The translations under genes and the position numbers were made by a program. The notes under the pieces were generated by a model. That model was not told the origin of the DNA, did not search any database, and saw nothing but the letters and a program-made list of their open reading frames with translations. This document shows, piece after piece, positions 21,050-64,000 of a stretch of DNA of 64,000 bases. The first letter of the stretch is position 1; every line of letters begins with the position of its first letter. This DNA comes from Anolis carolinensis (taxonomy: Eukaryota), in the NCBI RefSeq assembly GCF_035594765.1, contig NC_085846.1, forward strand, positions 26,647,190-26,711,189, written 5' to 3'.

Positions 21050-22309
21050 GTAAGTTATAAAAAGTCAGGAAGTAAACAACAGCATTTCAGGAAGGAGAAG
21101 GAGGAGGAGGGGGAGGGAGAGAAACAGCCCAACCAAAGAAACCCCCTCCCCGAAAAAAGACCCTAAGTGTGTCATAAAAGAACACAATGGGCGAGAGAAG
21201 GGGGTCTCTTCTGTCTCTTCTGTTTTGAAAAGCTGGTCTTACTCTTAAAAGAGAATTCTCCCTCCTTTTCTTCGCTCTTCCTCCGGGAAAGAAAAAAAAA
21301 GCCAACTTAGGTAATCTAAGGTTTTTTGGGGGCTGTCTAGGGTGAAAGCATGGTTTGCTTGGCTTAATGTATATGTATATATTTTAAATCAGGGTGTTTG
21401 TGTAATGTGGACGGGTTTGGCTTGAAAATGACCATCTTAACTCTGCTTCCTTTAATACGGAAAGGGAGAGAGAGAGGGAACCAATACAAATTGGACTGTG
21501 TTTCCTTCTCAGTGTGGGTCTGGGAAAAGGGGTGCGTTGGGGAATCTGAGCTGTTAGACTCAAAATAACCCCACAGTTGGGGTGATGATTCCACCATAAA
21601 TATAGCAGAGTACAAAAGTAAACTTCATAACCAGCAGAAACTTACATGTGGTGAGCTAGGATAAGCTTCCATTCATTAGGATGGCACAGGATGGTAGCAG
21701 AGGTCGATGGATGGAATCTATATGGAACCTGGGGAATATATTTGTGTTGTTGTTGTTGTTGTTTCAAGGGAGGGGAAGAACTTTCACGTGGAGAAGCCAA
21801 GTGTGTTTGTCTGTGACTCCCCGCGTCCTTGTTTACCTTAAAAAGGAGCCCCGGTTTCCTTCCGTGGCGCTCTCCCTGTCACTCTGGCTTGTTTGTTGAC
21901 GATTGTTTGTTTATGAAATGCGCCCGACGTGCCTATGAATATTTCAGAGCCAAAACCGCTCTCCTGCTCTTCTCCCCCCCTCCCCGAAACACCCGCTTTA
22001 TATAAAAAACAGTAAAAAGAGAAACGAGCTTAATTGGTTCGTTATATTTTATTTTATTTGCTACGGGGAACAACAGACTGGCAAACTCTTAAAACTTAAT
22101 CGTGTGCTTCTTGGTGCAACCTGGTGGTGGGTGGCTGCTATGAGCTTGCCTTCCCTCCCCCTTGGAGGGCAAAATGTAGGGAAAAGGATTTAGTGGCGGA
22201 GCGGGGGGGAGGGGGTTGGATGGAGGGTCAATAAAATATACCAATAATCTTTGCCTCTTCAATATTTTTTTGCGTGGTAAAGACGAACGCTTTGATTCCA
22301 TGGTCTTTA

Positions 22310-56822: not shown

Positions 56823-59800
56823 AGGGAGGAACTCTTCGGTTTTGTTTCCAGACTTTACATTGTAAAGTTTACATTGATTAATTTCCCATGAAAACTAGTT
56901 TAACTTGACGACGGATTTTCAATTTCGACACTTAATGTTTGTTTGTCGTGTGATGTGAGTCAGCATGGCTTCACATGTTCTGGAAAGAGGGGCGAAAGGG
57001 AATTTCCATTCATGGGTTTTATCCAGATTGAGAGATTTGCTCTGCTTGATTTTTTCAAAAAATGCTATAGTAGAGATTTGTTTTTATTTTCACGTCTGTG
57101 AAATACTGGCACAGCTTACCGATTTTACATTACCGTTGTGAATTGAATTTGTGATTAAAAAAGCAGACCTTTGTATTAAAAGAAGATAGTGCTGTTCAGT
57201 TTGGTAAGTGGCTAATAACAGGCACTATGGCCAAATATTTCAGTGTGTGAAACTAAATGCTCACGTTGAGGTTGTTGTTGTGTGGTCATGTGTCTGTTGG
57301 AATGATACTTTACTGCTTTACATTTACTACTAGCGGTGAACCAAAGTCTAGTGATATGAAGGTAATAGTGGAGAATAAAGTTGAGGTGATTCTTTGCCAG
57401 CCTAGCTCCGTGAAAAACTCGGTAGGTTCAGAAATAACAATGATCTTCCTTCCTTCCTCCCTTCCCTCTTGCCCACTCAAAGCCAACCAAACTTACATGA
57501 TAAGAAAACAAAGGCTTTATAACTAACCTCTCTTCAGGCCCTGCAGTAATTCCTCGAAAAAATTCTCCAGTTCAGCCCACAAGACTCCTACATTCCTGTT
57601 TTGCTTTGCTGCCTTTTAAACAAGCCCACCAAACAAACCTGTGCCCAAAACCCCATTCATATTTAAAATACTCTTTCCTCATATCCTTCCTTTCCTTTCT
57701 GGTCAAACCAATAAAGCAATGTGGCGAGAGTTAAAAGAAAGGAAAGCAACGTTACCCCCAAAGGCTCATTTCCCCCTTTTTTGGGTTAATTATTAGCTAA
57801 ACTCTTTGATAAAACAATGAAGGGTCGTTTCCCTCCCTGTTTTTCTTTCCTTTCTGTAACCCCATTAACAAGATTATTATACACTGCAGGGGAAGCCAGG
57901 TAAATTAAACGTAAACGACTGGAAATTAAATTCCAAATGGTTATGTGCTTAGGAAGAGAGGAAAAGGGATGTGTGTGAGAGAGAGGCAGGGATAGGATGT
58001 CCTTAAGAGCGAGCCTTCGAGGATGATTATTATTTTATACTTGCCAACAACGTACTGAAAGGGAAACATCATTTAGCTAAAGAGTTGTGGTTATACAGAT
58101 GACCAAAAAAAATCACTTAGGTAGAGTTGTGGTTATAGAGATGACAAAAACAGCTTCTCCCTGGTGAATAGTTTCCAGATCCGAAGTAAAGCTGTTCTAT
58201 TATGTGTTGGCCAATCCGTGTGTGTATGTGCGTCGGGACGTGTTTAAAGCCCCTTCTTTTACAGTTTATGGGACCAATTTAAGTCTCCTTTTGCTCCAAC
58301 GCCCTGCTGGTTTCACACTCCTCCTCCTTCCTGCTGCATTCCAGATCCCACGTTTATTTAGAATCCAAATTCTTTTTCTTTCTTTCTTTTTTCCACCTCA
58401 TTTTTATCTCGGTTGAAAAATTTAGGATTACTTTAACTAACTTTCTTCCCCTCTCTTTCTCCTTGCCACTAAGCGATTCCTTGCCTAGCAGTGTCTGCCC
58501 AGAGAAATATTTGGGTGTTGCTTTTAATCCCGTCATTTATCTCACTCTTCTTCTCCCCCCCCTCCCCACCGCCGCCTGTTTCTCTCGCCTCCTGCTTTGT
58601 AAAGTTGGCTTGAGCTAAGCGGAAAAGGCAGGAATGAGCGAAGGAGGGAGAGAAACCTGAAGTACTTTCCCCAGCTACAAAGCCCAGGCTGCACACGTTG
58701 TAAATAAATCCGTTTAATCTTTATTTATTCCCTGCCATTTGAGTTATGCCACACACTGGCCAAGATGGATTCTCGGAGGCAGAAGGAGGCTTCGGGAGGG
58801 GAACGCTTGTTCCTCCACCAACAGGCTGCAGGAAAAAAAATTATGAAAGACTACTTTGGCCTCATAGAAGCGGCTAGGAGATGGTTTCCAGATAACAAAC
58901 CTGGAGGCCCAGTGTAGAAATGAGTCAAAGATAGTGGAAGATGGGGCTCGGATATTTTCACAGCCATAATAGAAACATTCAGCAACACCACCTTACATTG
59001 TACACCACGCAAAGACCGAAATAAATGGCCCATCTTTTTAAAATGCCCTCTGCAAAGTTAAACAAAACATATATTTTCTCAGTGTCCATCCTCATCCCAA
59101 ATATTTTCTGGACATACATTTACATAGCAGGGGCACAACATCTAAAGGCATATATAAACAATGTTCTCAGGTTTACAAATCAGTTTTCTGCTCCACAAAA
59201 AATTAAGACAAATCATGCCTTAGGTTGAAGTCAACCTTTCCTTTCAAATAGAATTTTGGACAATATATTATTTTAAAAGAAAACATTAGCAACAACGTTT
59301 ACTTGAATGTGTATTCACGAAGCTGAACACCAGACCTTCCTTGCAAGGTGGGTAGGATGGGAAATAAAGAAATATTATAATGATGGATATCTATCAGGTG
59401 GTGAATTTCAATTAGTTTCTATTTTAAAGGCCTTTGCTGGGGAAACAAATACAGACGCTTTGGGTCACCTAAGTTTAGAAAAGATAAAAGTTTTCAGGAG
59501 TTTAAAATATGGGCCAGAAGAGCAGAGTTACATCTTGGTTGTTTTTTCCCCCCATTCCATATTTCCTCTTCCAACACAAATATATATTAATGTACACACA
59601 TACAGACACAAGCCCTTTCTGTATTTCCAGCAGCCTCTTTAAACTAACACCACAAGTTAAAAACAAGTAGCACAGTTACTCACTTATCTAACCACCAAGC
59701 AGCCAAGACCTCGAGCCTTAATCCAGATACTCTTGTTCACAAATGATATGTCAATATTTCCAAACTAGAGCCTGAAAGGTTGTATCTTTCTCAAATAACT

Positions 59801-61974
59801 CAATGAGAAAAGGGGGGAGGTTGTATTTTCCCCTTCTTTCTCTCCTGCCTCGCAGTTCCTTCTGTTTTTACCCACTAGTAAAGCAGAGCTATTTAAAGTT
59901 TGGATATATCCTCCACACAAAAGAGGAGGGAAGAAAAAAAATCCTTGTGTATATAAACCAAAAGAGGTGTGTTGTGCTGGGTGTGTGTGTGTGTAAGAGA
60001 GACTTTAAAAGCCCACTTCCTTTCCTTGTTATTTCCTTCAATTCTAAATGCATGGCGGCAGTGAAACAGTGAGGACTTCCTTGTCATTAAAACTGAAACT
60101 TGCAAGAGATTAAATCGCAATCCAGTAGCATTTCAGGACTCTTTAATCCTCCATAGAGAAAATTCGCATCAGTCATGTTGGGGGGGGGGGGGAGGGTTGT
60201 TATGTTGCCATGTGTTTTTGGGTAGAGAGTCCTTCCTATGAGATTAAACCTCCTGCAATAGACGGGTGATAGATAGGTAGATTGGATTACAACTTCATTT
60301 GTCCAGATTTGCAACGACATCGCCCTAAATTCAGACCATCAAAAACTGGGCTAAATTAGAGATACATGTTTACAACTTTCAACGCTAGTCCTGACGCTTT
60401 AAGATGTCTCTTGGAAAGGAAAGAAACGGAATGAAGGCGGGCACAACAGAGAGAGACACAGGCCACTCAAGTCTACAGTTGGACCATTTGAAGAAGATTT
60501 CTTGAAGTACAGGAGAGCCTCGAAATAAAGTCAAGGGAGGGCGACATATTTGAGCTTCCCCTATGTGAAGGGAATTGTGACTTGTAGGGGACCTGGTGAA
60601 ATAATTATGAAGCCAATCTCACCCTTTCATTCATTTTTGAAATGCAAGGTATTTTACAGAATTCTGACTTTATAGCAACACCAAAGGCACTCCAAGTGGC
60701 CAGCTACTGATGAAAGGACATTTAGTATAATGCCAAGTTTTTAACTTTGTTTGTGTTTTTAAATACATTACAACTGTATCCTCGATTCGCTTCTGATACG
60801 ATAAATAAATACCGAATTCTGACTTTTGAGACACTTCAATCTGTTCCGAGTTTTGAGACAAAAACAAACTCTGCCGCCCCAAACTCCCTTACTTAGGCAG
60901 GGCTCACCTGATATCGACCGTAGGGCTCTATACCGTATATATCATCTACCCGATGACCAATCGCTGTCGCCTTACCTATTGGGTTTCCTTGTTGAGTGAT
61001 CAATAAAGGAGAATTCTCGGCCGCCAGACCAGCCGCTCTCCTTAACTCTAAACTGTCCAAAGCCCGGCCGCCAACATAAAAACGCAAGAGGGCACAGTTG
61101 TGGGAAGATATACCGACTCTTCCTCCGAGCTCTGTCCTGCGATTCATTCCTCTTCTGGACTTCATAACACGGTATGAGGCCGGGGCGAGCAAAGAGACAC
61201 GCGTGAATATGTAAACACGCTCCCCCACGCGCCATTTCAAGCCATTAGGTTAATTTAATGAGGAAAATCAGGTAGAATGAGTGGAGGGGAGCTTGGAAAA
61301 GGAATTCTCCTTCATCCTGCACTAGGAGTTATTTTTAGGATACTCCGCATAGGTTAGACCTAGCCAGAAATAAGGAGAGGGGGAGTTTTGAACTTTCCAC
61401 CCTCCAAAGATACAGGTTTCCTCCTTCTTTTGCTACCGATGTGAGTGTGTGTAGATGTCCCCTTTACTCGTGGCCACTTTCTAAATTTCCTATAAACACG
61501 CTGGGATGGACTAAACTTTTCCAAAGGAAGCGAGAACCCCTTTTCCATCTCCCTCTCCCCCTTCGCCTCTCCACGTTCCCAGCCAGGCTCTTCTCCTCCC
61601 TCATTTGTGCTTCCACACTTCCCTCTTCCTCCTCCTCCTCTGTGTATTTATTCCTCTTTTTGTTTGAAAAGGAAACTTCAAAAAACGATTCTGGGGATGG
61701 ATCTTATCTCTGGGAGAACGACTATATATGGCTCAAAAGGGGGAGCCTGGGCTGGAAGGTGTGGGTTTGTGTATATCTGAGGTTGAGCTCGGATAGGTGG
61801 GTGCGTTTGGGGGTGTTTATTCCCCTCCCCTCCTCTCTCTCTCTCTCTCTCTTCTCTGTCTCTGTCTGTTGTTGGAAAGTGATGGTTGTTGGTGGCGGAG
61901 ATGCTGTGGCTGGTTTGTTCTAGGGGGGTCCCCTGTGCAAAGCGAACCCCTCCAGGGTGCGATTTCGGCGTCTT

Positions 61975-62210
61975 CGGCTCCTGCGATTGGTCAGCGCCTG
62001 ATCAGATGGTTTTCTTTCCTTATGTCCCTGGTTGGCACGCGGCCATCCCCCTTCAGCTAAAACCCAATCTCCCATATACTGCTAATAGCTAAACCGCTTG
62101 GACTATAAAACGCAACAAATCATAAAGACCCCGGGAAAGAGCAGGCTCTGCTCTTCAGCATTATTATTATTGTTATTATTATTATTACTGTTATTATTAT
62201 TAATTTTCCA
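61975..62210 (+). promoter_or_regulatory. HOXB6 proximal promoter / leader
   Basis: GATTGG and CCAAT boxes, TATAAAA at 62104-62110, and AATCATAAA. Confidence 0.6.
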
Positions 62211-62646
62211 ATGAGTTCTTATTTCGTCAACTCCACTTTCCCGGTGAGCTTAGCCGGGGGCCAGGAGCCCTTCCTGGGACAGCTGCCCCTGTATCCCACC
62301 GGGTACGCGGACCCTTTAAGGCACTACCCCGCCACCTATGGACCTGGGGCCGGCGGCGTCCCAGAGAAGGCTTACCCGGGCGCGCCTTACTACCAGCAAG
62401 CCAACGGAGGGGCGCCTTACAGCCGGAGCCCCGCCGCCTGCGATTACGGGACGCCCCCCGGCTTCTACCGGGAGAAAGAGACCTCCGCCTGCTCCCTCTC
62501 CAGTTTGGACGACCCGGCTCAGTTCGGGCAGGAGTCGGGCAGGAAGTCCGACTGCTCCCAAAGCAAACACGTCTTCGGGGACAGCGACGACCAGAAGTGC
62601 TCGACCCCCGTGTACCCCTGGATGCAAAGGATGAACTCCTGCAACA
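62211..62646 (+). CDS. HOXB6: Homeobox protein Hox-B6, exon 1 (exon 2 outside window)
   Basis: [19 protein letters not shown]...KCSTPVYPWMQRMNSCN. Donor A|GTAAGT at 62646/62647. Colinear position after B7. Confidence 0.95.
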
Positions 62647-62839
62647 GTAAGTTGCCCTTGACTCTTGACTTTTCGGGGACTTGTGACTTTCAGAGGGAGA
62701 CAGGGTTGGGACACATACACACACACAGAGAGACATCTTTGCACCCCATTTCTAAACAGGAAATGTCCTCCTCCCAATCTCACTTCCCCTCCAAGCCAAG
62801 ATAGTGAGTGGCTTGGAGGGCGAAGGAAAACTTTCTCCA

Positions 62840-63248
62840 AACAAGCATGTGGACAATTTCAACAGAAAGGAGGAAACCATGAAAATGAAAAAAATCTGGC
62901 TATCAGTATTTTAAAAAAACTCTAAAATCAGGACAGTTAATAAAGAACAACATTTAGAAACAGGGTAAGTTACCAGGGTAAGTTAACACCTCACAACAAA
63001 AGATTGCCCCAGGCAGGAAGCAGCCAGACCTTGAAGCTGCAAGGCTATTCAATGCTAATCAAGGTGGCCAACTCCAACATTCACACCTGCCTCAAACAGA
63101 CAAGAGGCAGTCCTACCTTGGACTTTTCACAGATATATAAACCCCATTGCGTAGTTTCTAACAGATCTCACAACCTCTGAGGATGCCTGCCATAGATGCA
63201 GGCGAAACGTCAGGAGAGAATGCTTCTGAAAACTCATAGCAACCCAGT
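62840..63248 (+). mobile_element. Penelope-like element 3' fragment in HOXB6 intron
   Basis: KHVDNFNRKEETMKMKKIWL remnant, 3' region and pLTR with hammerhead motif. Confidence 0.8.
63174..63214 (+). ncRNA. Minimal type I hammerhead ribozyme motif (Penelope-derived), intact core, in HOXB6 intron
   Basis: CCT-CTGAGGA-T-GCCTGC-catagat-GCAGGC-GAAA-C-GTC|AGG. Confidence 0.78.
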
Positions 63249-64000
63249 TTCTCCAAACTTTTCTCCCACTTTAGATAATTTCTGTGTCTGTTTGTTTTGG
63301 TTTGTGAGTAAGGGGAGGCGAAGAAGGGTCAGCCTATGCCCCCCCCCCCCTCTTCACTTGGTTCGTTTCTTTCGCTAACTTTCTGCTTCCAAGAAAAGTC
63401 CGGAGACTCTTGATGGAACGGAAAGCCTTGTTAGCTGTCACTCTCCAGGAGTGATTTACGTGGCCTGTCTGAGGTAGTTTTACACATTTCGCACACACAT
63501 GCAGGGGATGGGATCCGGGTGACGCTGAAGTCCCCCTCCTGTGTGATTTTAATGAACCTGGTCTTACTTTCCCCCTCCACCTCTTCCCTTGCCAGCCCCA
63601 AAGAGTGCAGGCTTTAATCCCAGCCGCTTGACTAATGTCAAAAGGTTTTAAATATTTGAAAGGAAAGAGCTACATTTTTAATGAAACTCTGCCATAATGA
63701 AATGCCTGTCTGAAGAGGAGTTGCTCATAGTTTCTCTTTCGCTCCCTGCCCCTCCCTCCTCCTCCCACAAATCCCGCACCTTCTTCTGCTGCTGCCATCG
63801 GCGGTTCCCTCCAGGTGCATTTTATTTTCCATGGAAATTATTTTTAAGAACAGATCAAGACGTGCTAACAGCTCGTCCTTGTCCTCCTGTTCCTATGTGT
63901 TATAATGTGCCTCCAGGCTTTAAAATTCCTGGGGAGGAATGTGAGAGAGAATCGATACACTTCCATAAATTCCCCAATCTATCACAGTTGCTGATAAAGG

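What the first reader, a model, noticed from the sequence alone, without database searches (positions are those of the whole stretch)
58700..61240. Candidate two-exon antisense gene diverging from the HOXB6 promoter, with a spliced 113-aa ORF
Seen on the minus strand: an ATG at 61235 in strong context (GAAATGGCG, also YY1-like) within a CpG-rich non-repeat block. An 87-codon ORF runs exactly into a strong donor TAG|GTAAGG (intron starts 60975). Two more donors follow (CAG|GTGAGC 60907, TAA|GTAAGG 60892). A strong acceptor tctttcataattttttttcctgcAG| precedes 58825. The spliced frame continues ...KPN-SLLVEEQAFPSRSLLLPPRIHLGQCVA* (stop 58746-58744), followed within ~15-30 nt by overlapping AATAAA (58729-58720) and ATTAAA (58718-58713). 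Established: mammals have antisense transcripts here (HOXB-AS3, which encodes a micropeptide); I see no similarity of this ORF to that peptide. Inference: a squamate antisense lncRNA or small-protein gene.
Basis: partly seen in the sequence, partly recalled or inferred. Interest (0 to 1): 0.72.

Follow-up and report, generated by a model that had tools for sequence, protein, structure and literature searches.

The report
Chance ORF over conserved HOXB6-upstream elements
The proposed two-exon antisense small-protein gene upstream of the anole HOXB6 gene is most likely a chance reading frame lying over conserved non-coding DNA, and the only open question is whether a known antisense non-coding RNA (HOXB-AS3) ends there.

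Summary

- In the congener Anolis sagrei the ORF carries +7, -1, +4, +1 and +3 nt indels.
- The ATG is absent from 3 of 5 other squamates, and three of them have in-frame stops or no start.
- There is no Pfam hit and no candidate homologue among 5.8 billion proteins.
- The window holds 38 other ATG ORFs of this size outside the HOX exons.

The predicted splice was not seen. In four public runs, contigs run collinear through donor, acceptor and poly(A) site. The two runs that look like RNA cover the 'intron' but hardly exon 1.

What is real is a string of about 20 conserved non-coding blocks across the HOXB7-HOXB6 spacer.
- One is a small CpG island (60880-61250).
- Another is a block conserved across squamates, turtle and crocodile (58670-58779). 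It holds the AATAAA run and is best conserved after the 'stop'.

HOXB-AS3, a known vertebrate antisense lncRNA, ends in this spacer in human, and the anole keeps its promoter block. A non-coding antisense 3' end here therefore stays possible (about 0.2) but is not shown.

The finding is ordinary and of low interest.

The parts
60976..61235 (-). Candidate exon 1, an 86-codon + 2 nt ATG ORF. It is read here as a chance ORF.
   Evidence: the coordinates are right. A. sagrei has +7/-1/+4/+1/+3 nt indels. Sceloporus, Podarcis and Hemicordylus lack the ATG, and Sceloporus, Phrynosoma and Hemicordylus have in-frame stops; no family and no homologue; the 5' half is the least conserved part (0.46).
58744..58825 (-). 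Candidate exon 2 coding part (26 codons + stop).
   Evidence: the frame is open to TAA at 58746-58744; 4-nt and 7-nt deletions in Sceloporus and Phrynosoma; conservation is 0.65, lower than the 0.93 just after the 'stop'.
58826..58850 (-). Acceptor-like site ttttttttcctgcAG|.
   Evidence: the AG is kept in 4 of 5 other squamates and lost in Sceloporus; this is the background rate, since 34% of all dinucleotides are kept in at least 4 of 5; contigs X1 rec1, X6 rec18 and X8 rec28 run straight through it.
60900..60910 (-).
   Evidence: AGGTGAGC(C/T) is kept in all six squamates; 1 of 10 minus-strand GTRAG is kept where 0.8 is expected, so this is not beyond chance. X1 rec8 and X12 rec13 run through it unspliced.
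60880..61250 (.). Small CpG island, about 1.0-1.3 kb upstream of the HOXB6 ATG.
   Evidence: GC 0.51, CpG o/e 0.97, 23 CpG. The flanks have 0.31-0.33.
60939..61116 (.). Squamate-conserved non-coding core inside the CpG island. It includes a CCAAT box on the + strand (about 60950-60962), TTTATTGATCAC (60999-61010) and an 18-nt core (61079-61096).
   Evidence: blocks 60939-60975, 60990-61075 and 61067-61116 are at least 80% identical in four non-Anolis squamates; the 18-mer is 100% identical in turtle and crocodile, the second core matches 12/12 in crocodile and 10/10 in turtle, and both keep the same spacing.
61235..61262 (.). Run of TAAT-type (homeodomain/CDX-like) sites, CATTAAATTAAC-CTAATGG-TTGAAAT, that ends at the candidate ATG.
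   Evidence: kept in the four iguanians and partly in Hemicordylus, while the ATG itself is not kept.
58670..58779 (.). Sauropsid-conserved AT-rich block that holds the stop codon, both AATAAA, the ATTAAA, a TATTTACA motif and a GTGTG. It is either a forkhead/CDX-type binding-site cluster or a conserved minus-strand poly(A) site.
   Evidence: this is the most conserved stretch of the finding (0.93 in 58690-58746); 84% identical to turtle and 76% to crocodile. ATAAATAAAGA and TATTTACA are invariant in 8 species.
60670..60810 (.). High-copy repeat insertion inside the candidate intron.
   Evidence: summed depth of 10^3 to 6x10^4 in all four runs, with loose ends at 60670 and 60775; absent from A. 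sagrei.

Best explanation
The window is the HOXB9-HOXB6 part of an Anolis HoxB cluster with all genes on the + strand. It is 100% identical to assembly GCA_035594765.1, which from memory of the accession is A. carolinensis.

The stretch 58700-61240 lies in the HOXB7-HOXB6 spacer, 1-3.5 kb upstream of the HOXB6 ATG. It holds no protein-coding gene. The 113-aa spliced frame is a chance ORF that happens to lie over conserved non-coding DNA.

What selection keeps are short non-coding blocks, in three groups.
- A CpG island with a CCAAT box and two cores that are identical from anole to turtle and crocodile.
- A run of homeodomain-type TAAT sites next to the 'ATG'.
- An AT-rich block with CDX-like (TTTAT) and forkhead-like (TATTTAC) motifs.

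These most likely work as cis-regulatory modules of the central HoxB genes: binding sites for HOX/PBX, CDX, forkhead and NF-Y-type factors, plus a CpG island that may serve as a Polycomb or promoter platform.

Shown: the conservation pattern, the decay of the frame, the absence of relatives, and the absence of the predicted junction in the available contigs. Inferred: the regulatory function and the factors named, which rest on consensus resemblance only.
For: Locus identity.

Frame decay:
- Five indels, four of them not a multiple of three, lie between two Anolis species that are 93% identical over this stretch.
- The ATG is missing in Sceloporus, Podarcis and Hemicordylus.
- There are in-frame stops in Sceloporus and Phrynosoma.

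No family and no homologue.

Chance level: 38 comparable ORFs lie outside the HOX exons in the same window.

Conservation ignores the gene model:
- About 20 blocks are spread over 56.6-62.2 kb, at least eight of them inside the 'intron'.
- The ORF 5' half scores 0.46 and exon 2 coding 0.65, but the post-stop stretch scores 0.93.

Deep conservation of short cores in turtle and crocodile.

Splice-like motifs are conserved only at the background rate.

Contigs of four runs are collinear across donor, acceptor and poly(A) site. In X6 and X8, whose uneven depth suggests RNA, 60205-60742 (the 'intron') has depth 23-24, while 60874-61040 (most of exon 1) has none.
Against: - The runs are Logan contigs whose RNA label is a guess. 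They carry no strand, and contigs drop rare forms, so a rare spliced antisense RNA cannot be excluded.
- Donor 2 and the acceptor are in fact kept in 6/6 and 5/6 squamates.
- The AATAAA block has the layout of a real poly(A) site, and contig X6 rec18 ends at 58692, about 21 nt past the ATTAAA.
- A. sagrei keeps an open frame from the same ATG, although it is mostly a different peptide.
- No binding or reporter data exist for the proposed regulatory role.
Confidence: 0.8

Rival explanations
1. The conserved donor (60908|60907), the acceptor (58826|58825) and the AATAAA/ATTAAA block are the last intron and terminal exon of the anole ortholog of the lncRNA HOXB-AS3 (mouse Hoxb5os). That RNA would start downstream of HOXB5, run antisense through HOXB5 and HOXB6, and be cleaved near 58695. 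It would be non-coding and act in cis on HOXB5-7 as reported for human cells.
For: - PMC8330917: HOXB-AS3 starts about 900 nt downstream of the HOXB5 3' end and terminates in the HOXB6-HOXB7 spacer. The paper reports orthologs from mouse to elephant shark.
- the anole has the promoter block (L002:21004-21439). It is 88-90% identical to marsupial and Xenopus and carries the paired CDX sites CCATAAA/TTTATGG.
- donor 2 is kept in 6/6 squamates and the acceptor in 5/6.
- the layout AATAAA, about 20 nt, CA, then GTGTG is kept in sauropsids.
- contig X6 rec18 ends at 58692.
Against: -: no contig shows the junction. X1, X6 and X8 contigs pass through 58826 unspliced, and X8 and X12 contigs continue past 58692.
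- exon 1 is not covered in X6 and X8, although neighbouring stretches are.
- conservation of the splice motifs equals the background of this CNE-dense spacer.
- the acceptor is lost in Sceloporus.
- PMC8330917 found no exon sequence similarity beyond mammals and does not list a lizard ortholog.
Confidence: 0.2
2. The CpG island at 60880-61250 belongs to the sense strand. It would be an alternative upstream HOXB6 promoter or 5' exon, or simply part of the first intron of a long HOXB6 isoform that starts about 7 kb upstream of the ATG. The RNA-like coverage of the region would then be sense pre-mRNA.
For: -: in Hemicordylus the HOXB6 gene range starts with an ATG-bearing exon 7.4 kb upstream of the canonical ATG. 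This maps to window position about 54831, inside a block conserved to marsupial and Xenopus.
- a CCAAT box reads on the + strand (GACCAATCGC) in a conserved block.
- coverage across the whole spacer in X6 and X8 is broad, patchy and unspliced.
Against: - No strand information is available.
- The anole and A. sagrei gene ranges start at the canonical ATG.
- The meaning of the gene range in the Hemicordylus record is inferred, not stated.
Confidence: 0.2
3. A lineage-restricted (Anolis, or A. carolinensis only) de novo small-protein gene is transcribed divergently from the HOXB6 upstream CpG island and spliced 60976>58825.
For: -: an intact ATG in a good context, a strong donor and acceptor, an open spliced frame and a poly(A) signal.
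- A. sagrei also keeps an ATG and an open frame.
- the sequence context is a CpG island.
Against: -: only about 20 residues are shared with A. sagrei, because the frame shifts.
- no family and no homologue.
- the ORF length is ordinary for this window.
- no junction was seen, and exon 1 is uncovered in the two RNA-like runs.
- the ORF 5' half is the least conserved part of the stretch.
Confidence: 0.03

Closest known systems
HOXB-AS3 / Hoxb5os lncRNA (Degani et al. 2021, PMC8330917)
   Same: It lies on the strand opposite to the HoxB genes, and its human form terminates in the HOXB6-HOXB7 spacer, where this finding lies. It is non-coding by PhyloCSF. The anole retains the conserved promoter block with paired CDX sites downstream of HOXB5.
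   Different: No anole transcript, junction or 3' end was shown here. The paper lists no lizard ortholog and finds no exon similarity beyond mammals.
HOXB-AS3 53-aa peptide (Huang et al. 2017, as cited in PMC8330917)
   Same: A small ORF proposed inside an antisense HoxB transcript.
   Different: PMC8330917 describes it as primate-specific. The anole ORF is not even kept between two Anolis species.
Conserved non-coding elements / enhancers of Hox cluster spacers with HOX-PBX, CDX and forkhead-type sites
   Same: These are short blocks of high identity over 170-280 million years, with no reading frame and AT-rich TAAT/TTTAT/TATTTAC motifs. They are spread over the whole spacer without regard to the proposed exons.
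   Different: No binding, chromatin or reporter data exist for these particular blocks. The motif assignments are by consensus only, and a CTCF consensus scan was uninformative.
Long HOXB6 isoforms with far-upstream 5' exons
   Same: Hemicordylus has an upstream exon about 7.4 kb before the ATG, inside a block conserved across tetrapods. That would make the finding's stretch sense-strand intron.
   Different: This is not annotated in the two Anolis records fetched, and the strand of the anole RNA is unknown.

Membership tests
Small-protein (micropeptide) coding gene | Reading frame kept in related species (no frameshifts or stops) | tested here: not met
   A. sagrei has +7/-1/+4/+1/+3 nt indels. 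Three species lack the ATG. Sceloporus, Phrynosoma and Hemicordylus have in-frame stops.
Small-protein (micropeptide) coding gene | ORF longer than chance for the sequence context | tested here: not met
   38 ATG ORFs of at least 87 codons lie outside the HOX exons in the same 64 kb.
Small-protein (micropeptide) coding gene | Relatives or a domain in protein libraries | tested here: not met
   no Pfam family for the 87-aa and 25-aa pieces; no candidate among 5.8 billion proteins; the exact ORF is not on record. The joined 113-aa model was not searched.
Small-protein (micropeptide) coding gene | Mature transcript with the predicted splice | tested here: inconclusive
   no such joint in 4 runs, and contigs are collinear through both sites. 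However, these are contigs whose RNA label is a guess, and they carry no strand.
Small-protein (micropeptide) coding gene | Translation (ribosome footprints, peptides) | not testable with these tools
   No Ribo-seq or proteomics tool was available.
HOXB-AS3 / Hoxb5os lncRNA ortholog | Conserved promoter downstream of HOXB5 with paired CDX sites | tested here: met
   L002:21004-21439 is 88-90% identical to marsupial and Xenopus, with CCATAAA at 21158 and TTTATGG at 21171. This lies outside the window.
HOXB-AS3 / Hoxb5os lncRNA ortholog | Antisense RNA that terminates in the HOXB6-HOXB7 spacer | tested here: inconclusive
   The position fits, and the poly(A)-site layout is kept in sauropsids. 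X6 rec18 ends at 58692, but X8 and X12 contigs run on and no strand is known.
HOXB-AS3 / Hoxb5os lncRNA ortholog | Exon sequence similarity to mammalian orthologs | not tested
   Against the marsupial spacer only 54363-54646, 61925-62126 and four short matches of 19-41 nt outside the finding's stretch align.
Conserved non-coding cis-regulatory element | Sequence identity well above the surrounding spacer in distant species, without a coding pattern | tested here: met
   the blocks 58670-58779, 60939-61116 and others meet this. Cores are identical in turtle and crocodile, and indels are not multiples of three.
Conserved non-coding cis-regulatory element | Factor binding or enhancer activity | not testable with these tools
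   Motifs were named by consensus only. The CTCF consensus scan gave 69 hits against 79 expected.
CpG-island promoter | At least 200 bp, GC at least 0.5, CpG o/e at least 0.6 | tested here: met
   60880-61250 has GC 0.51, o/e 0.97 and 23 CpG.
CpG-island promoter | Transcription start mapped in it | not testable with these tools
   Contigs cannot show RNA starts, and no CAGE data were available.

The most novel reading that the evidence does not exclude
The AT-rich block at 58670-58779 is the reptile and bird-lineage termination module of the HOXB-AS3 ortholog. It would be a terminal exon (58825 to about 58695) joined from the conserved donor at 60908, with its last 130 nt and poly(A) site under sauropsid-wide constraint. 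That would give the first conserved exon sequence for this lncRNA outside mammals.
Probability: 0.15. Interest if true: 0.4.

Novelty: already known. Interest (0 to 1): 0.12.

Why it matters
If the gene had been real, it would have been a new small protein inside a Hox cluster. It is not supported.

What remains is ordinary: conserved non-coding blocks upstream of HOXB6, and possibly the 3' end of a known antisense lncRNA.

The practical value is a map of which short cores in the HOXB7-HOXB6 spacer are kept across squamates, turtles and crocodiles. It is also a warning that ATG, donor, acceptor and AATAAA strings in CNE-dense, AT-rich Hox spacers arise, and are conserved, at background rates.

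Tried and rejected
- **Logan transcript contigs.** I looked for contigs carrying the exact ORFs of the region: the 87-aa ORF, 57257-57523(+) and 59307-59639(+). None is on record.
- **Rfam.** Nothing reached gathering scores in the whole window. A permissive scan of 54000-62300 gave only chance-level hits: mir-885, HOXA11-AS1_6, HOTTIP_3 and CrcZ, all far below gathering.
- **CTCF reading of the 18-nt sauropsid core.** The consensus with up to 3 mismatches gives 69 hits in the window against 79 expected, so no claim can be made.
- **Conservation of donor 2 and the acceptor as evidence for splicing.** I rejected this after the background count. 7.9% of all 5-mers are invariant in six squamates, which predicts 0.8 of 10 GTRAG kept against 1 observed. 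For acceptors, 4 of 14 AG are kept against 4.8 expected.
- **The only joint in the reads.** It joins 57984 to 59979, has ends GG..CT and only 21 nt on one side. It links two (TG)n-type runs and is not a splice.
- **Repeats.** No direct or inverted repeats of at least 40 nt occur in 56000-64000.
- **Earlier notes of the scan.** They held nothing on this stretch beyond the finding itself.
- **Searches deliberately left out.** The joined 113-aa model was never sent to a search tool. Its two pieces were searched apart by reference, and the joined step was left out. Only its frame was checked locally. No human contig was fetched or compared, and protein clusters named for primates were avoided.
Full report
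**Where the stretch lies.** The window carries HOXB9 (exon 1 from 20512), HOXB8 (36393), HOXB7 (44648, with exon 2 to about 50240) and HOXB6 exon 1 (62211-62646), all on the + strand.
- The HOXB6 exon translates to 145/145 residues of the Anolis HOXB6 protein P0135.
- The window is 100% identical to locus L002 of assembly GCA_035594765.1. The window coordinate equals the L002 coordinate plus 52210. That this accession is A. carolinensis is from my memory; the protein names fit.
- The finding therefore lies in the HOXB7-HOXB6 spacer, 1.0-3.5 kb upstream of the HOXB6 ATG, read on the strand opposite to the Hox genes.

**The observation.**
- The ATG is at 61235, and the 260-nt first exon ends AATAG|GTAAGG.
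- Two further donors lie at 60907 and 60892, and the acceptor lies before 58825.
- The spliced frame has 113 codons with TAA at 58746-58744.
- Two overlapping AATAAA and one ATTAAA lie at 58729-58713.
- The block around the ORF is a small CpG island: 60880-61250, GC 0.51, CpG o/e 0.97, against 0.31-0.33 beside it.

None of this exceeds chance.
- The window holds 38 ATG ORFs of at least 87 codons outside the HOX exons.
- Acceptor-like sites, GTRAG and AATAAA each occur once or more per strand-kb.
- The ORF ends at the donor because GTAAG supplies the in-frame TAA.

**Coding test.** I fetched orthologous spacers through HOXB6 proteins.
- Squamates: A. sagrei (L003), Sceloporus (L004), Phrynosoma (L005), Podarcis (L008), Hemicordylus (L001).
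- Other species: Trachemys (L007), Crocodylus (L006), the marsupial Dromiciops (L009), Xenopus (L010).

In A. sagrei, which is 93% identical over the ORF, there are indels of +7, -1, +4, +1 and +3 nt. Only about 20 residues in the middle are shared with the anole peptide. Sceloporus, Podarcis and Hemicordylus have no ATG. Sceloporus, Phrynosoma and Hemicordylus have in-frame stops. Exon 2 has 4-nt and 7-nt deletions in Sceloporus and Phrynosoma.

Pfam finds nothing in either piece. The word search over 5.8 billion proteins finds no candidate. A species-restricted de novo ORF cannot be excluded but has nothing in its favour.

**Transcript test.** The one run search listed 18 holders, none of them on record as RNA. 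I laid X1, X6, X8 and X12 on 57200-62200. All four are Logan contigs.
- X1 has even depth (7-12), and its contigs total 1.3 Gb, so it looks like genomic DNA. X12 has low, even depth and probably is DNA too.
- X6 and X8 have uneven depth (0 to 61) in single-copy sequence, so they look like RNA or an enrichment assay.
- No contig joins 60976 or 60908 to 58825.
- Contigs run straight through the acceptor and the poly(A) signals (X1 rec1 57200-60192, X6 rec18 58692-59555, X8 rec28 58627-59052). They also run through the donors and the ATG (X1 rec8 60782-62143, X12 rec13 60832-61237).
- In X6 and X8 the 'intron' stretch 60205-60742 has depth 23-24, while 60874-61040 (most of exon 1) has none.
- The single reported joint (57984 to 59979, ends GG..CT) links two (TG)n-type runs and is not a splice.

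Contigs drop rare forms and carry no strand. This is therefore absence of support, not proof of absence.

**What is conserved.** A six-squamate alignment of 56.6-62.2 kb shows about 20 blocks at 80% identity or more in the four non-Anolis species. They are spread over the whole spacer, and at least eight lie inside the proposed intron.

Within the finding the order of conservation is the reverse of a coding gene:

| Part | Conservation |
|---|---|
| ORF 5' half | 0.46 |
| ORF 3' half | 0.77 |
| Exon 2 coding | 0.65 |
| 57 nt after the stop | 0.93 |

The block 58670-58779 is 84% identical to turtle and 76% to crocodile. ATAAATAAAGA and TATTTACA are invariant in eight species.

In the CpG island, two cores are kept in turtle and crocodile at the same spacing. 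An 18-mer (61079-61096) is 100% identical in both; TTTATTGATCAC (60999-61010) matches 12/12 in crocodile and 10/10 in turtle.

A run of TAAT-type sites (61235-61262) abuts the 'ATG', and a CCAAT box reads on the + strand at about 60950-60962. Neither block aligns to marsupial or frog. Only 54363-54646 and the HOXB6 proximal promoter at 61911-62127 do.

**Are the splice-like motifs specially conserved?** Donor 2 (AGGTGAGC) is kept in all six squamates and the acceptor AG in five of six. Donor 1 is kept in three of six.

In this spacer, however, 7.9% of all 5-mers are invariant, so 0.8 of the ten minus-strand GTRAG sites are expected to be kept and one is. Likewise 34% of dinucleotides are kept in at least 4 of 5 species, so 4.8 of 14 acceptor-like AGs are expected and four are. 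The conservation is therefore no evidence for splicing.

**Comparison with what is known.** Degani et al. 2021 (PMC8330917) describe HOXB-AS3 (mouse Hoxb5os).
- It is antisense, starts about 900 nt downstream of the HOXB5 3' end, and terminates in the HOXB6-HOXB7 spacer.
- It has positional orthologs from mouse to elephant shark.
- Its PhyloCSF scores are negative, and its reported 53-aa peptide is described as primate-specific.
- Its promoter is deeply conserved, with paired CDX sites.

The anole has that block at L002:21004-21439. It is 88-90% identical to marsupial and Xenopus and carries CCATAAA and TTTATGG 13 nt apart. This lies outside the window, at about 73.4 kb in window numbering.

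An anole HOXB-AS3 is thus likely to exist and could end in the finding's stretch. On the minus strand the AATAAA block has a canonical layout: hexamers, about 20 nt, CA, then GTGTG. One RNA-like contig (X6 rec18) ends at 58692. I put this reading at about 0.2.

A third, non-exclusive reading concerns the sense strand. In Hemicordylus the HOXB6 gene range opens with an ATG-bearing exon 7.4 kb upstream. This maps to window position about 54831, inside the tetrapod-conserved block. If the anole has the same long isoform, the whole stretch is sense-strand intron, which would explain the broad unspliced coverage.

**Verdict.**
- The strings are real. The gene is not supported, and the ORF is chance.
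- What selection keeps is non-coding: a CpG island with deeply conserved cores, and an AT-rich sauropsid block.
- They are most likely cis-regulatory modules of the central HoxB genes, and possibly the poly(A) region of the known lncRNA HOXB-AS3.
- Interest is low.

- The joined 113-aa model was not sent to any search. Its two pieces were searched apart by reference, and only its frame was checked locally.
- No human sequence was fetched or compared.

Noticed in passing
window 54363-54646 (wider squamate block 54313-55109): This is the most deeply conserved non-coding block of the spacer: 83-87% identical to marsupial and Xenopus and 86% to turtle. In Hemicordylus the HOXB6 gene range begins with an ATG exon that maps to about 54831. 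It is probably the conserved distal HOXB6 promoter or first exon.
   Followed up: partly
window 56353-58486: In the two RNA-like runs (X6, X8) this unit is 3-8 times deeper than its neighbours (depth 34-61 against 7-19). It holds the sauropsid-conserved block 57777-57960. It looks like a transcribed exon or UTR of unknown strand, and could be the true terminal exon of an antisense or sense Hox spacer RNA.
   Followed up: partly
window 60670-60810: A high-copy repeat of about 110-140 nt, with summed contig depth of 10^3 to 6x10^4 in all four runs. It is absent from the A. sagrei ortholog, so it is a young insertion in the A. carolinensis lineage.
   Followed up: partly
L002:21004-21439 (about 73.2-73.6 kb in window numbering, beyond the window's end): A homolog of the HOXB-AS3 promoter block, about 2 kb downstream of the HOXB5 stop. 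It is 88-90% identical to marsupial and Xenopus and carries paired CDX sites CCATAAA/TTTATGG.
   Followed up: partly
window 56777-56849: A block conserved in squamates, turtle (87%) and marsupial (90% over 29 nt). It holds a 12/14 match to the CTCF consensus (56806-56819, minus strand). The consensus scan as a whole was at chance level.
   Followed up: no
whole window: Rfam at gathering scores finds no mir-196, although 20 kb upstream of HOXB9 is in the window. The miRNA may lie further upstream in this repeat-expanded cluster.
   Followed up: no
window 62150-62205: A (TTA)n-type microsatellite lies directly before the HOXB6 ATG. Similar runs recur in the HoxB spacers of all squamate loci fetched.
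   Followed up: no
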